Below, in pieces: positions 28,705 to 57,140 of a DNA stretch of 64,000 nucleotides. Below the pieces are notes generated by a model. It was not told where the DNA came from. It was given only the letters and a program-made list of their open reading frames with translations, and made no database searches. Position 1 is the first letter of the stretch. Each line of letters opens with the position of its first letter. Where the stretch lies: IMG/VR virus record IMGVR_UViG_3300013120_000738, positions 163,726-227,725 of that record. One strand, written 5' to 3'. Made by a program: the position numbers and the translations under genes.

Positions 28705-29165
28705 TTATTTGGGCCAGCCGGTGTGGTTTCTGAACCAGTGGGTGAGTTTTTGGATGCTTTGGGGGTCGTTGAGGTCGCATTGGTAGCAGATTGTTGGGCG
28801 GTCTGCTGGTTGGATTGTGAGGGTTGTACCTTGGATTTTTATTTTGTGGCTTGGGGCGTGGCAGCAGGTGGCGGGTTTGTCGTAGGTCCAGCGGTGTGAG
28901 CCGTCTGGTCCTTGGTAGTAGTGGATGTGGAGGTGGGTTATTTGGGTTTGGAGTTCTTGTCTTATGGCTTCTATTGTTGGGTTTTTGGGGTTTGTGGGGG
29001 TTAGGAGGATTTGGTCTGTGATGTTGAATGCTTGTAGGTGTTTGAGGATTTGTTGTGGTGTGTAGGTTTTGTGAGGGTTTTGCCTGTGGGGAGTTGTGCT
29101 GTGTAGGTTTTGTTGGGGTTTGTGAGTTTTTGGAGGTTTTTTATGGTTGCTTTGATTTTGGTCAT
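28705..29165 (-). pseudogene. DLxDP-family protein, frameshifted (missed by ORF track)
   Basis: MTKIKATIK... joins the -1 frame KTYTPQQILKHL...CYQCDLNDPQSIQKLTHWF near 29070. Confidence 0.6.
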
Positions 29166-29199
29166 GATTTGTGTTTATGTCGTGGAGTTCTGGGATCCA

Positions 29200-29493
29200 T
29201 TAGTTTTCGAGTTGGTCTAGGAGGTCTGTGAGGTTGTCGGGTGTGGCTCCTATCCATTCTGTGGCTGTGGTGATGGCGTTTTGGATTCCTTCGGTGATTT
29301 TTTGCATTTTTTGGACGTAGTCGTGGAGTTGGTTGTAGGCTGAGAGGCCGTGTTGGGCGACGTGTCTTGGGTCTGTAGGGATTGTTTTTTTGAGGGTTTG
29401 GTAGAGGTGTCCGAGGTATTTGCAGAGGAGGCAGTAGTTTATTGCTTTTGCTATTTGGGTGTAATAACTCGAAAAACCTTCGCAAGAATTCAC
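29200..29493 (-). CDS. Hypothetical protein
   Basis: GTGA-coupled. Confidence 0.6.
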   Translation of the reverse strand: MNSCEGFSSYYTQIAKAINYCLLCKYLGHLYQTLKKTIPTDPRHVAQHGLSAYNQLHDYVQKMQKITEGIQNAITTATEWIGATPDNLTDLLDQLEN

Positions 29494-29810
29494 TCGAAAG
29501 AAGTCCTTATAATTTTTACGAGATTTTCTAGGACGTCTGGATCGGCTATTGGAAGTTTTCTATTCTCGGTACTAAAATGATGCTCTAGGAATGGGTTTTC
29601 TAGAACTACATCAAGAAAGTCACCGCTGTGATAAATCTTTGCTTGTTTTCGACTCTCGTATGGATTATGTGATTCACTGTAGACTCTAACTCGCGGAATT
29701 CTAGCGGCGTTATCAATCTCTACACCGCAATCGAAGCCCTGAGAAAGCAAGTATTCCTCGACACCGTGTAGGATCGCTGCGGTGATACCCCATTCAGCTG
29801 TCAGAATCAT
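29490..29810 (-). CDS. DLxDP-family protein
   Basis: LPIADPDVLENLV. Confidence 0.65.
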   Translation of the reverse strand: MILTAEWGITAAILHGVEEYLLSQGFDCGVEIDNAARIPRVRVYSESHNPYESRKQAKIYHSGDFLDVVLENPFLEHHFSTENRKLPIADPDVLENLVKIIRTSFE

Positions 29811-30102
29811 TTTACATAGAGCGTGTTGTACTTTTTCATATCCAGCACTTCTTCTGCCACATCCTCAAAAATCTGAGGGTCTGCTGTAGCGATTGGCAAA
29901 TTCAACCTCTCTAGTTCTTTCTCTAACACAGCTTCCAAATCATCGGTGTGTAAGTCGACTAATACTCCAGGACCAGGGTTGATAATTACTCTTACGGTTT
30001 GAGGTCAAGAATTATGATTTCAGCGTCAGGCTCTTCGAGGCCATTAGCACTTACTTCAACCCTGTTGACTCCTCTGCTGAGGAGCCGGAAGAAATACCTC
30101 AC
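29807..30102 (-). pseudogene. DLxDP-family protein, frameshifted
   Basis: VRYFFRLL...ILDLK joins the -1 frame TVRVIINPG...IATADPQIFEDV near 30000. Confidence 0.5.
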
Positions 30103-30365
30103 TTCCAATGCCCTTCTGCATCATCAAACTCGTCAGCTAGCCTTTGAGCTCTTATCCGGCGATTCTCCATCGATTCATGATCTTGGCCGGTGAGTTGTTT
30201 GTAAACCTCGTTGTAGGCCTCGGCTTGGCTAAGAGCCATACCGGGGTCACGAAGTTCACAGTTGAGCAATACAATGAGTGGTCCTACAGACGATTCTGAG
30301 AGTTGGATTGTTTTACCCGCCATAGGATTCCTCCGGCCTGTAATGCCGAACCATTCGCTCGGCAT
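30099..30365 (-). CDS. Hypothetical protein
   Basis: Coupled ORF. Confidence 0.6.
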   Translation of the reverse strand: MPSEWFGITGRRNPMAGKTIQLSESSVGPLIVLLNCELRDPGMALSQAEAYNEVYKQLTGQDHESMENRRIRAQRLADEFDDAEGHWK

Positions 30366-54902: not shown

Positions 54903-54976
54903 CGCCCCCGGCAGGATTCGAACCTGCAACACACTGTTTTGAAGACAGCCGAGCTAACCAATTGCCCCACGGGGGC
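54903..54976 (-). tRNA. tRNA-Trp-type tRNA with UCA anticodon (opal suppressor)
   Basis: 7-bp acceptor GCCCCCG/CGGGGGC, G73, anticodon arm GCTGT-CTTCAAA-ACAGT, short variable loop, GCAGG-TTCGAAT-CCTGC; no CCA encoded. Confidence 0.9.
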
Positions 54977-54992
54977 GACAAGATAGAAATAC

Positions 54993-55676
54993 ATGCTACA
55001 ACATCAAAATAAATTCATCATTGTCGCAGGTAATAGAACAGGATCATCATGGCTCGTACACCTATTAGGACAGCACCCAGAAGTGATATGCTTCGACGAA
55101 GTCCTAAATGACACCACGAATTCAGAAGTTGGTACCAGCATTCGCCTCCAACACCTATACTTCAGCCAAACTAGTATGAGAAGAAGAGCACAAGTTAATA
55201 GGGTAGCTGGTTTTAAAATTATATATTGGCGTCTAACCGAACAAGTACACAGATTTATAGAAGACCACAACGTTCTAGTAATTCACCTGTTAAGACGCAA
55301 TCTAGTAGACTGCATGGTATCCCAACTTGTAGCAAAACAAACTAAAATCTGGCACGTCTATGATAATCAAGATTATGAGGGTCGACTAGCTGAATATAAT
55401 GCTACCAGAATACATATCAAACCATCTAAAATGCACACTTGCTTTAGAAAAAGAGAACAAGCAATAAATGATCTTGAAGGCCGACACAGAACATTATTAT
55501 TCTATTATGAGGACCTACCTAGCATAGATGATATTCATGATTTCTTAGGAATAGAAAGAGTCGATGTTGGCGGTGCTATATTAAAGCAACGCAGAGCACC
55601 AAAAAATGTGATAGTTACGAACTATGAAGAACTAGAAAAAGAATTCAGAGATACTAAGTATCAATGGATGTTCTAA
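54993..55676 (+). CDS. Sulfotransferase (Stf0-like P-loop)
   Basis: AGNRTGSSWL (5'-PSB), FDEVLN, GFKI, HLLRRNLVDCMVS (3'-PB). Confidence 0.82.
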   Translation: MLQHQNKFIIVAGNRTGSSWLVHLLGQHPEVICFDEVLNDTTNSEVGTSIRLQHLYFSQTSMRRRAQVNRVAGFKIIYWRLTEQVHRFIEDHNVLVIHLLRRNLVDCMVSQLVAKQTKIWHVYDNQDYEGRLAEYNATRIHIKPSKMHTCFRKREQAINDLEGRHRTLLFYYEDLPSIDDIHDFLGIERVDVGGAILKQRRAPKNVIVTNYEELEKEFRDTKYQWMF

Positions 55677-56397
55677 ACACATGCTCGTACTGTTTAATAA
55701 ATTTCTCGTACCCTATCTCTTTTAGATGGGCTGGTGTAGCAATATGTGTTGGAGGTACAAATTTAGCAAGCTTATCCTCACGACACTGAAGATTACCTAC
55801 ACCAAATTTCAATAATAACCTCATCAAAGCTTTGAGAGAAGCCTCAATCACTGGTGTATCATTAGTACTACGAATCATCCGCTTAAATAAGTTCAGCGGC
55901 ATATCTCCACCATCTCTAAAACCATAACCACAACGACCTCTAGCATTTGTTATATTATGGCGATGTTCTTCATCTGATAATTCTATCGGCTGAACAAACT
56001 TCATTCTAGCACTGACAATCTTCTCCCACCCAGCAAGACTAGTAACTAATAAAGCATTCTTACTTTCTGCTGCATTACCATGATCGACATATGTGTCCAT
56101 AATAGACACTAACATACGAAAATTAGTAATACTCAACCAGTACTCATGATGCCCCTCAAAGACTTCCTTAAATAGTTCCCAATCATCTTGCCATGGTTTC
56201 TTCTTTAGCTTTCGACGTAGCCTAGCTATCAATCTCTTTATAAGTATACTATCGCATTCAGTTTTCTCTTGTAATTCCTCCAAGCTTATTTTGATATAAG
56301 GATCGTGTTCAGCCCTTCTCATTCCTCTCTTGAAGGCACAAGCACAACTATGCTTTTCATCCGCACAAGGTCTATATGACGAGCCACTCATTAGCAA
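55654..56397 (-). CDS. Uncharacterised helical protein
   Basis: NFRMLVSIMDTYVDHG motif, which I recall near glycosyltransferase loci (unverified). Confidence 0.55.
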   Translation of the reverse strand: MLMSGSSYRPCADEKHSCACAFKRGMRRAEHDPYIKISLEELQEKTECDSILIKRLIARLRRKLKKKPWQDDWELFKEVFEGHHEYWLSITNFRMLVSIMDTYVDHGNAAESKNALLVTSLAGWEKIVSARMKFVQPIELSDEEHRHNITNARGRCGYGFRDGGDMPLNLFKRMIRSTNDTPVIEASLKALMRLLLKFGVGNLQCREDKLAKFVPPTHIATPAHLKEIGYEKFIKQYEHVFRTSIDT

Positions 56398-56782
56398 ACT
56401 CGTTGATCTTGAGTTCCAAATCCTCTACCTTGTTTAGTAGCTCTATTCCTTCTTCCAGTTTTTCATCTGGAGTATCAGGACCTAATCTAGACCTCCAGAA
56501 GTCCAATTTAAGCTGAGTTAATGCATATTCTCTTTGAAGAGGATGCACCTTCATAGCTATATGCCATTCTCTTCTACAATTATGGCATAACCATGCTATG
56601 AGACCAAAAGCCATTTGGACCTCAGCACAAAGGATAGCTTCTACCTTCTGCTCCTCGTCATATTCTTCATCGAAACTTCCACTACCACATCTCGAGCAAG
56701 GTTTAGGAATTACTTGTATACCAGGACCGTCAAACATGATGACTCCATAAACATTGGTTTTCGTTTGCAACTCTATAATCAT
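56372..56782 (-). CDS. Zn-binding hypothetical protein
   Basis: CSRC...CHNC. Confidence 0.6.
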   Translation of the reverse strand: MIIELQTKTNVYGVIMFDGPGIQVIPKPCSRCGSGSFDEEYDEEQKVEAILCAEVQMAFGLIAWLCHNCRREWHIAMKVHPLQREYALTQLKLDFWRSRLGPDTPDEKLEEGIELLNKVEDLELKINEFANEWLVI

Positions 56783-57140
56783 CGCGAAAACGAGCCGCCA
56801 TAGCTGCTCTATCTTCGTCGTTCAAATACCTTCTGAGGTAGGTCATATTCTCATCATGACCAAGACATATCTTGATGGTCTTCAACCCAAGTTTAAATAG
56901 TATTGCATTTCTGGTAGCACTAGTCACACCATTTGCGGCGTTAAACCTAAATGTACCATTCTCAAAGTAAAGACCCTCATACCTTACACAACTATCCTCC
57001 ATCTGTATAATAAAGCACACATGAATGACTGGTTCGAATCTCGGATCGAACAAATTAGCAGGAGATATAATCTGAGACGGATTAGTATTACTCAAGGCTT
57101 TCAAAAGAGCCCACTCAGGATGATGTGTTATTTTCGTCAA
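56730..57140 (-). CDS. DLxDP-like hypothetical protein
   Basis: NLFDPRFEP. Confidence 0.5.
   Translation of the reverse strand: MTKITHHPEWALLKALSNTNPSQIISPANLFDPRFEPVIHVCFIIQMEDSCVRYEGLYFENGTFRFNAANGVTSATRNAILFKLGLKTIKICLGHDENMTYLRRYLNDEDRAAMAARFRDDYRVANENQCLWSHHV

What the first reader, a model, noticed from the sequence alone, without database searches (positions are those of the whole stretch)
28705..57140. Expanded family of about 18 small proteins sharing a 'DLxDPxS/F' motif
Seen: CDLNDPQSIQKL (28705), PIADPDVLENL (29490), ATADPQIFEDV (29807), FDLSKPDVDLEEI (33320), YDLSNPSVDLERV (33939), IDLNSPQSIEII (37065), GYENPQFIDEL (38508), RLDDPNFNIEEF (40068), FFEDPKFDPAL (41775), ALEDPNTDPQR (42753), LDLSHPRSL (43430), FDLRDPQSIEGI (44412), VNLADPTSIEQL (44993), EYCDPKLFDLL (46981), SFSHPEFFDRL (47342), DWADPNCIPGI (48934), DLDDPQCFDKM (49463), NLFDPRFEP (56730). 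Many share the layout amphipathic helix, several beta strands, motif, final helix. They are interleaved with glyco-enzymes and PNKP. Inference: a highly diverged single-fold arsenal (binders, adaptors or anti-defence proteins), each tuned to a different target. I recognise no named family.
Basis: partly seen in the sequence, partly recalled or inferred. Interest (0 to 1): 0.78.

Follow-up and report, generated by a model that had tools for sequence, protein, structure and literature searches.

The report
Expanded small-protein family in marine phage
A marine jumbo phage carries about twenty very diverged copies of one small, unnamed protein domain with a frataxin-like shape. The same domain forms dense tandem arrays in other uncultured phage DNA, but only about 7 to 13 of the 18 listed genes belong to it, and its function is untested.

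Summary
All 18 strings exist, but the loose "DP" signature is close to chance. A tighter motif (I-D-L-x-D/N-P-x-S-I/L, or h-P-I-x-D-P-N-h-F) is strongly enriched.

- **Secure members (7):** 28705, 33320, 33939, 37065, 43430, 44412 and 44993 are supported by sequence profiles.
- **Probable or possible (6):** 29490, 38508, 46981 and 49463 are probable. 47342 and the fragment at 29807 are possible.
- **Unsupported (5):** 40068, 41775, 42753, 48934 and 56730.

Independent support comes from other metagenome contigs. These carry 4 to 12 tandem copies with both motif flavours.

AlphaFold models of 37065 and 38508 both give helix, five strands, helix (the frataxin-like sandwich). The motif is the turn from strand 5 into the last helix. 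Only core residues and this helix cap are conserved, and the exposed sheet positions are variable.

Function is inferred only. The proteins are probably diversified binding modules for host takeover or counter-defence.

The parts
28705..29199 (-). Secure member. The domain lies in 28708-29019. The open frame has no canonical start codon, and its coding strand is very A+C-rich.
33320..33973 (-). Secure member. The domain is N-terminal (33665-33961), followed by a Cys-containing C-terminal extension of about 110 aa. Motif is FDLSKPDVDLEEI.
33939..34244 (-). Secure member, 101 aa. Motif is YDLSNPSVDLERV.
   Evidence: P0003; foreign 4-sequence HMM, E 0.009.
37065..37388 (-). Secure member and the reference structure. 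105 aa from ATG 37382. Lies directly upstream of the polynucleotide kinase/phosphatase gene.
   Evidence: Foreign-only HMM gives E 4.5e-5. AlphaFold gives pLDDT 88.5 and pTM 0.79 with H4-15, E19-24, E34-39, E43-51, E54-61, E64-73, H79-103. The ESM Atlas model has pTM 0.72.
43430..43780 (-). Secure member, 116 aa. Motif is LDLSHPRSL, with an insertion in the last helix.
   Evidence: P0010; hhalign 95.9% with the full family profile. The foreign-only HMM is weak (E 0.5-2.4).
44412..44723 (-). Secure member, 103 aa. Motif is FDLRDPQSIEGI.
44993..45565 (-). Secure member, 190 aa. The domain is about 45221-45514, followed by a C-terminal extension.
   Evidence: Leave-one-out HMM gives E 3.9e-4 at rank 1. 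Also (P0004) and a hit with the strict foreign-derived motif.
29490..29810 (-). Probable member, 106 aa. Motif is LPIADPDVLENL, the second flavour.
   Evidence: Hit with the strict foreign-derived motif. Foreign-only HMM gives E 0.13, better than the best reversed decoy at 0.61. hhalign gives 13-22%. The same flavour, LPIADPNIFQKI, occurs in the foreign array L034.
38508..38954 (-). Probable member, 148 aa. Motif is GYENPQFIDEL.
   Evidence: AlphaFold with the family alignment gives pLDDT 74.6 and pTM 0.68, with the same order H15-35, five strands, H113-126. Its list of PDB neighbours matches that of 37065. Sequence evidence is weak (E 0.4-3.5).
46981..47376 (-). Probable member, 131 aa. Motif is EYCDPKLFDLL. 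Lies directly upstream of the epimerase gene and is not called in the JGI annotation.
   Evidence: hhalign gives 45.6% over 75 columns with the foreign-only profile. HMM E is 0.04-0.6. Hit with the looser foreign motif.
49463..49936 (-). Probable member, 136 aa from ATG 49873. Motif is DLDDPQCFDKM.
   Evidence: Hit with the strict foreign-derived motif. hhalign gives 35-39%. Compare FDLNDPQMFDKM in the foreign array L034.
47342..48172 (-). Possible member. The family-like domain sits in the middle of a 276-aa protein. Motif is SFSHPEFFDRL.
   Evidence: Hit with the looser foreign motif. The layout fits by eye. The profile aligns over the motif only.
29807..30004 (-). Possible fragment, about 43 aa, resembling the C-terminal half of a member (LPIATADPQIFEDV).
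   Evidence: It is too short to test.
31895..32029 (+). Possible relic of a member on the opposite strand (FDINDPTLIERIRNFF, 44 codons).
   Evidence: HMM E is 0.003-0.03 and 0.024 in the genome search.

Best explanation
**Shown.** The region holds a lineage-specific expansion of one small domain of about 90-110 aa.
- The domain is predicted to fold as a frataxin-like sandwich: an N-terminal amphipathic helix, a five-stranded antiparallel sheet, and a C-terminal helix.
- The 'DLxDPxS' signature is structural. It is the end of strand 5, a five-residue turn with an invariant Pro, and the N-cap of the last helix.
- The conserved positions are the alternating core hydrophobics and this cap. The sheet positions between them are highly variable.
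- About 7 secure and 4-6 further probable or possible copies lie in window 28.7-50 kb, inside a tightly packed minus-strand operon of a marine jumbo myovirus. Another 6-7 copies lie just upstream of the window, and 2 lie elsewhere in the genome.
- Foreign contigs carry the same domain in tandem arrays of 4 to 12 copies.

**Inferred.** The copies are non-enzymatic binding modules, with a conserved scaffold and diversified surfaces.
- They were made by repeated duplication and fast divergence.
- Each would bind a different host or phage partner during host takeover or counter-defence.
- Some copies carry C-terminal extensions that may add an effector or anchoring part.
For: **The family is real.**
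- The profile search of 1.84 billion proteins found, besides the genome's own copies, P0011 (E 6.6e-5).
- P0011 lies on a 1-kb contig on which all four tandem ORFs end in the motif.
- A DNA-pattern scan of metagenomes followed by an HMM filter found further arrays: L010 with 4 copies and L034 with 12 copies in 3.6 kb, plus L014, L018, L029 and L036.
- An HMM built only from those foreign sequences finds genome copies at E 2.8e-13, 2.8e-6, 4.5e-5, 1.6e-3 and 3.3e-3. Fourteen hits score better than the best reversed decoy.
- The motif derived from the foreign arrays is concentrated in the two clusters.

**Fold.**
- See for the two models.
- The two models share the same PDB neighbours: Med17 C-terminal domain, frataxin, PsiB, YdhG-like protein and type III secretion chaperones.
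- The literature defines the alpha-beta5-alpha frataxin-like fold and notes its use in immunity proteins and in sensors of restriction systems (PMC9424270, PMC12065111).

**Scaffold versus surface.** Column entropies mapped on the model show conserved core positions (residues 8, 12, 35, 37, 46, 48, 50, 55, 57, 72, 74, 80, 83, 87) and a conserved cap (73-79). The positions between them have entropy of at least 3 bits.

**Fast divergence.** In the syntenic relative L018 the neighbouring gene is 52% identical (E 7e-86). The family copy at the matching position shares only 9 of 28 residues (E 0.002).

**No enzyme signature.** No Pfam or PHROG family matches any of 32 members.
Against: - No experiment or expression data exist. 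No listed RNA run holds the region.
- Foldseek found nothing in the PDB.
- Both AlphaFold models used my family alignment. The model of 38508 is therefore not independent of the hypothesis.
- A profile of the part before the motif recruits no non-core candidate above the decoys.
- Net charges range from -15 to +14, so there is no common surface chemistry such as DNA mimicry.
- No toxin, defence or anti-defence gene was recognised next to any copy.
- One secure copy (28705) lacks a start codon and may be decaying.
Confidence: 0.5

Rival explanations
1. The motif is only a generic strand-to-helix capping box, and the 18 ORFs are unrelated small proteins. There is no family.
For: - The same DLxDPxSI string occurs in unrelated proteins found by the scan: short-chain dehydrogenases, an AAA ATPase and a DNA polymerase. 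It also occurs in Calx-beta repeats.
- Plain DP is hardly enriched.
- A profile without the motif finds no non-core candidate.
Against: - The tight motif is enriched 6-fold or more, and only in the two clusters.
- Foreign tandem arrays share the motif and the N-terminal helix pattern.
- Foreign-only HMMs give full-length matches down to E 2.8e-13.
- Two models have the same topology.

This rival is the best reading only for 40068, 41775, 42753, 48934 and 56730.
Confidence: 0.07
2. The copies are accessory or specificity subunits, or sensors of nucleic acid or modified DNA. They would work with the interleaved enzymes (glycosyltransferase-like protein, polynucleotide kinase/phosphatase, epimerase, methyltransferase) rather than against host proteins.
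For: - Copies sit directly upstream of the kinase/phosphatase (37065), the epimerase (46981) and near the methyltransferase (49463).
- Structural neighbours of the ESM model include DUF5655, a domain fused to GmrSD type IV restriction enzymes.
- The literature says that frataxin-like domains in such systems sense modified DNA (PMC12065111).
Against: - In the foreign arrays 4 to 12 copies follow each other with no enzyme between them.
- No residues on the sheet face are conserved that would suggest a shared ligand.
- Net charges vary from strongly acidic to strongly basic.
Confidence: 0.15
3. The copies are chaperone-like or structural proteins. For example, they could be carriers for proteins packaged in or ejected from the virion, by analogy with type III secretion chaperones.
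Against: - The region has no recognised structural genes. The tail sheath and the replication genes lie elsewhere in the genome.
- Twelve copies in a row in L034 fit poorly with a stoichiometric structural role.
Confidence: 0.08
4. Many copies are decaying duplicates with no present function, the remnants of a duplication-prone hot spot.
For: - 28705 has no start codon and overlaps another frame.
- There are short fragments at 29807 and 31895.
- Sequence identity between copies is extremely low.
Against: - Most copies are intact ORFs with overlapping start and stop codons in an operon, and most are called by an independent annotation.
- Core positions and the helix cap are kept across copies and across genomes.
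- In the A+C-rich arrays, codon position 3 is 90-96% A+C in the proposed frames, which shows that these frames are maintained.
Confidence: 0.08

Closest known systems
Frataxin-like fold proteins (CyaY/frataxin 4HS5, Nqo15 2FUG chain 7, YjbR 2FKI, YdhG-like 9T2W; DUF5655)
PsiB, the plasmid anti-SOS inhibitor of RecA (3NCT)
TriTu immunity protein of the Salmonella Rhs toxin TreTu (7ZHM chain D), and frataxin-like immunity proteins (Imm54, PMC9424270)
   Different: No toxin gene was recognised next to any copy. There is no sequence match. The genes lie in a phage operon, not in a polymorphic-toxin locus.
Multigene families of small accessory genes in variable regions of large phages (for example T4 hyperplastic regions); from my own knowledge
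   Same: Many short, tightly packed, fast-diverging genes of unknown function in a non-structural region. Foldseek against viral models also finds similar-looking uncharacterised proteins in several jumbo phages, some genomes with several hits.
   Different: Here one recognisable domain accounts for about 20 genes. The domain recurs in foreign arrays of up to 12 copies with extreme A/C-ending codon usage.
Anti-CRISPR AcrIIA11 (9UTM)

Membership tests
Frataxin-like fold class (frataxin/CyaY, Nqo15, YjbR, YdhG-like/DUF1801, DUF5655, Imm54) | Topology of helix, five antiparallel strands, helix (alpha-beta5-alpha), as defined in PMC9424270 and PMC12065111 | tested here: met
   DSSP on the AlphaFold models gives H, E, E, E, E, E, H for both 37065 and 38508. 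These are predicted models, not solved structures.
Frataxin-like fold class (frataxin/CyaY, Nqo15, YjbR, YdhG-like/DUF1801, DUF5655, Imm54) | Structural similarity clearly above unrelated folds | tested here: inconclusive
   [not shown]
Frataxin-like fold class (frataxin/CyaY, Nqo15, YjbR, YdhG-like/DUF1801, DUF5655, Imm54) | Profile match to one of the Pfam families of the class | tested here: not met
   No Pfam family at E <= 1 for the 18 candidates other than four sub-threshold matches to unrelated families. No Pfam family at E <= 0.01 for any of 32 members. No PDB sequence match with E < 0.29.
PsiB anti-SOS protein | Sequence homology to PsiB, and binding and inhibition of RecA | tested here: not met
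   [not shown]
Polymorphic-toxin immunity proteins (TriTu, Imm54 type) | Gene lies next to its cognate toxin gene | tested here: not met
   Neighbours are other family copies, unknown proteins, the kinase/phosphatase, the epimerase, the methyltransferase and a SPASM fragment. No toxin domain was found.
Short-chain dehydrogenases that carry the same DLxDPxSI string | Rossmann fold with a glycine-rich nucleotide-binding motif, length of about 250 aa | tested here: not met
   Family members are about 100 aa, have the alpha-beta5-alpha fold and give no Pfam SDR match. The dehydrogenases appear only as motif-only false positives.
The new family itself (working definition) | N-terminal helix with h-h-x-A-h-x-x-x-L-x-E, then five strands, then h-[D/P]-[L/I]-x-[D/N/S/H]-P-x-[S/h]-[I/L/F] leading into the last helix, in a domain of about 90-110 aa | tested here: met
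   Met for 28705, 33320, 33939, 37065, 43430, 44412 and 44993. Partly met for 29490, 38508, 46981, 49463 and 47342. Not met for 40068, 41775, 42753, 48934 and 56730.

The most novel reading that the evidence does not exclude
The domain is the scaffold of a hyper-diversifying counter-defence or host-takeover arsenal. It travels between marine phages as tandem cassettes whose coding strand is written almost only with A- and C-ending codons. This peculiar composition would itself be functional, for example by giving structure-free early mRNAs or DNA poor in palindromic target sites.
Probability: 0.15. Interest if true: 0.8.

Novelty: new member of a known kind. Interest (0 to 1): 0.45.

Why it matters
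Large phages are full of small genes of unknown function, and few of these can be grouped. Here about 20 of them in one genome, and arrays of up to 12 in other uncultured phage DNA, reduce to one recognisable scaffold with a diagnostic motif. This gives a usable profile for annotating such genes. It also yields a set of natural variants of one fold to screen for partners (host proteins, defence systems, or the phage's own enzymes). Finally, the family is linked to an unusual codon-composition island. If the copies prove to be inhibitors, the family would be a compact source of new binders against bacterial proteins.

Tried and rejected
- **Pfam and PHROGs:** nothing found for all candidates or for 32 members.
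- **PDB sequence search with the family profile:** nothing.
- **Word-indexed protein searches:** found only the genome's own proteins.
- **Megablast of 12 kb against GenBank phages:** no match.
- **DNA-pattern scan of viral contigs:** 0 hits.
- **DNA-pattern scan of 185,579 prokaryote genomes:** only motif-only false positives, so no prophage copies were found.
- **Other assemblies that hold P0004:** 99.99% identical, so they are useless for measuring divergence.
- **Iterated HMM search:** it began to pull in false positives (an AAA ATPase and a dehydrogenase), so I did not use its late rounds as evidence.
- **Profile of the part before the motif:** no power for non-core candidates.
- **ESM Atlas model of 41775:** too poor to use (pTM 0.30).
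- **Promoter and terminator scans:** counts are as in shuffles.
- **RNA runs:** none was listed as holding the region, so I did not use read laying.
- **Palindrome avoidance as the reason for the A+C-rich strand:** clear only for 28660-29470 and L010, not for L034, L002 or L014. Rejected as a general explanation.
- **TGA recoding, suggested by the tRNA(UCA):** TGA is the commonest stop in the region (25 of 52 genes). Rejected as global recoding.

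
Full report
**Setting.** The window is the last 64 kb of a single 227,725-bp virus record.
- IMG/VR classes the record as linear, and CheckV estimates it at 63% complete.
- The genome encodes a tail sheath, a DNA polymerase, an NAD-dependent ligase and an SbcC-like nuclease. It is therefore a large myovirus.
- Nearly identical DNA (99.99%) occurs in several metagenome assemblies, on contigs up to 340 kb, and in marine sequencing runs.
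- From about 29.5 to 58 kb the genes lie on the minus strand and are packed with overlapping start and stop codons.
- Recognisable genes are few: a SPASM fragment, a polynucleotide kinase/phosphatase, two NAD-dependent sugar epimerase/dehydratase genes and a methyltransferase.

**The observation.** All 18 strings are present. The coordinates quoted are the low ends of the ORFs, not the motif positions.
- The loose common denominator (an acidic or polar residue followed by Pro) is not remarkable. DP occurs 36 times against 25.2 +/- 4.6 in shuffled ORFs.
- A tighter form is remarkable. [DN]Lx[DNSKH]P occurs 8 times against 1.0 +/- 1.0, six times denser than in the rest of the genome.
- BLASTP all against all finds only one pair among the candidates, 33320 with 33939.

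**Independent evidence that a family exists.** I built a profile of eight motif-bearing copies and searched it against 1.84 billion representative proteins.
- Beyond the genome's own proteins and repeat-protein false positives, the search found one foreign protein, P0011.
- P0011 lies on a 1,066-bp contig whose four tandem ORFs all end in the motif.
- I then scanned metagenome contigs for a DNA pattern written in the codon style of that contig and filtered the hits with the HMM. This gave L010 (4 copies), L034 (12 copies in 3,586 bp), L014, L018, L029 and L036.
- An HMM made only from the 24 foreign sequences finds, in a six-frame ORF set of this genome:
  - a copy just upstream of the window (E 2.8e-13);
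  - 28705 (2.8e-6), 37065 (4.5e-5) and 44412 (1.6e-3);
  - another upstream copy (3.3e-3);
  - then 31895(+), two copies elsewhere in the genome, 29490, two more upstream copies, 44993, 49463 and 46981.
- All of these score ahead of the best reversed-sequence decoy (E 0.61).
- A regular expression derived only from the foreign arrays hits 6 times (strict) or 10 times (looser) in window 28-57 kb, against 0.14 and 0.9 expected. It hits 5-6 times in the small upstream cluster, and at or below expectation elsewhere.

**Which of the 18 belong.**
- Secure: 28705, 33320, 33939, 37065, 43430, 44412 and 44993.
- Probable: 29490, 46981 and 49463, from the foreign-derived motif plus weak profile support. 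For 46981 the hhalign alignment covers 75 columns. 38508 is also probable (see the structure section below).
- Possible: 47342, where the domain sits inside a larger protein, and the 43-aa fragment at 29807.
- Unsupported: 40068, 41775, 42753, 48934 and 56730.
  - 40068 has a confident ESM model (pTM 0.71) whose structural neighbours differ from those of 37065. It also lacks the N-terminal helix.
  - In 48934 and 56730 the string lies near the N-terminus, in a different layout. 48934 overlaps the methyltransferase gene and is not called in the independent annotation.
  - For 41775 the only available model is too poor to use. 42753 was not modelled. Neither is hit by the foreign-derived motif or recruited by any profile.
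- A profile of the part before the motif does not recruit any non-core candidate. For the probable group, the evidence therefore still leans on the motif region.

A second cluster lies at genome 158.7-162.1 kb, just before the window.
- Its copies are at L001 8730-9122, 9677-10006, 10000-10284, 10626-11006, 10954-11307 and 11649-12071, all on the minus strand.
- Two single copies lie at genome 98654-99085 (+) and 102052-102474 (-).
- The family size in this incomplete genome is therefore about 20.

**Structure.**
- AlphaFold with a 29-sequence family alignment models 37065 with pLDDT 88.5 and pTM 0.79. The elements are helix 4-15, strands 19-24, 34-39, 43-51, 54-61 and 64-73, and helix 79-103.
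- The motif is D73 at the end of strand 5, the turn L-N-S-P-Q, and S79 at the start of the last helix.
- 38508, modelled with the family alignment, gives the same order of elements at lower confidence (pLDDT 74.6). That model is not independent of the alignment.
- Foldseek finds nothing in the PDB (best E 0.19). It finds only weak matches in AlphaFold DB clusters (best E 4e-3).
- In the viral library Foldseek finds many uncharacterised proteins of large phages at E 5e-4 to 0.1.
- These values are in the range the tool calls common. I therefore assign the fold class (frataxin-like, alpha-beta5-alpha, as defined in PMC9424270 and PMC12065111) but no family membership.

**What is conserved.** I mapped the alignment on the model.
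- Low-entropy columns are the i/i+4 hydrophobics of the two helices, alternating hydrophobics in strands 2-5, a Glu at the end of helix 1, and the cap D-L-x-D/N-P-N-S.
- The strand positions in between have entropy of at least 3 bits.
- Only Pro is invariant across 29 sequences.
- Net charge ranges from -15 to +14.
- This is the pattern of a conserved scaffold with free surfaces, not of an enzyme or of a shared ligand site.

**Rate of change.** Contig L018 shares a syntenic module with window 26.5-29.2 kb.
- The neighbouring gene (window 26572-27288) is 52% identical to its L018 counterpart (E 7e-86).
- The family copy at the matching end of the convergent block shares 9 of 28 residues around the motif (E 0.002).
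- Either the copy evolves much faster than its neighbour, or it has been replaced by a paralogue.

**Mechanism.** The following are shown: the family, its fold class, its expansion in arrays, its conserved-core and variable-surface pattern, and its fast divergence.
- The following is inferred: the copies are non-enzymatic binding modules that each recognise a different partner during host takeover or counter-defence.
- This reading is favoured for several reasons:
  - the arrays need no interleaved enzyme (L034, L010);
  - the nearest fold neighbours include single-domain inhibitors and immunity proteins;
  - nothing suggests catalysis.
- The inference remains untested.
- The main rival is that the copies are partners or sensors for the interleaved nucleic-acid and sugar enzymes. 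In favour of this, several copies sit directly next to such genes, and frataxin-like domains serve as DNA-modification sensors in restriction systems.

**Comparison with what is known, and novelty.** The fold class and the phenomenon (lineage-specific families of small accessory genes in large phages) are known.
- The sequence family itself matches no Pfam, PHROG or PDB entry.
- It was not found in 185,579 prokaryote genomes by the pattern scan.
- I file it as a new member of a known kind.
- The most unusual side observation is the composition. The foreign arrays, copy 28705, its upstream neighbour, and the convergent genes at 26.1-28.3 kb use 82-96% A or C at codon position 3. I have no tested explanation for this.

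Noticed in passing
window 26076-29575 (genes 26097-28283 on +, 28705-29493 on -); also L002, L010, L014, L034: This is a convergent island whose coding strands are extremely rich in A+C. Minus strand 28705-29470 is A 0.40, C 0.38, G 0.10, T 0.12. Codon position 3 is 82-92% A or C here and 90-96% in the foreign family arrays, while the other family copies in the window have ordinary codon usage. Palindromes are depleted in 28660-29470 and in L010, but not in L034, L002 or L014. The cause is unknown.
   Followed up: partly
window 28705-29199 and 29001-29165, minus strand: The secure family copy at 28705 sits in a 164-codon open frame with no ATG, GTG or TTG. A 54-codon ORF starting at ATG 29165 overlaps it in another frame and begins like a family N-terminal helix (MTKIKATIKNLQKL). 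This could be a frameshifted or decaying double copy, or a case of recoding. Contig L072, from another sample, reads identically.
   Followed up: partly
L001:8730-12071 (genome 158.7-162.1 kb, just upstream of the window); L100:3654-4085 (+) and L100:7052-7474 (-): There is a second tandem cluster of 6-7 family copies outside the window, and two isolated copies elsewhere in the genome. The copy at L001:10957-11292 is the best match to the foreign profile (E 2.8e-13).
   Followed up: yes
window 1-28000: A block with 52-58% G+C, against about 41% in the rest of the genome, lies between the two family clusters. Nine of its ten largest ORFs have no Pfam match. One (17846-19009, minus strand) has a ResIII/SNF2 helicase-like segment.
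   Followed up: partly
window 26572-28283 and L018:4855-8015: A module is shared with metagenome contig L018 (QZGF01000145.1). The 239-aa protein is 52% identical to its L018 counterpart, a 136/148-aa protein appears to match by eye (not tested), and a family copy lies at the end of the convergent block. The family copy has diverged far more than the 239-aa neighbour.
   Followed up: partly
window 54903-54976, minus strand: A 74-nt ordinary-type tRNA with anticodon UCA (reads UGA). ARAGORN labels it SeC, and Rfam tRNA scores 63.9 bits. TGA is nevertheless the commonest stop codon in the region (25 of 52 genes), so there is no global recoding. It may be an opal suppressor.
   Followed up: partly
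[not shown]
   Followed up: partly
window 35179-35472, minus strand: A 98-aa ORF matches only the SPASM iron-sulfur domain (E 2.2e-9), with no radical-SAM core recognisable upstream. It may be a remnant or a split gene.
   Followed up: no
loci L028, L035, L041, L074, L080, L089 and others from the pattern scans: The string DLxDPxSI also occurs in unrelated proteins: after strand 3 of short-chain dehydrogenases, and in an AAA ATPase, a DNA polymerase and Calx-beta repeats. The motif alone is therefore not diagnostic.
   Followed up: yes
window 43780-44160, minus strand: A 127-aa protein begins MLIAIDVSGS. By eye this resembles the metal-site motif of von Willebrand A domains. Pfam gave no match at E <= 0.001.
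   Followed up: no
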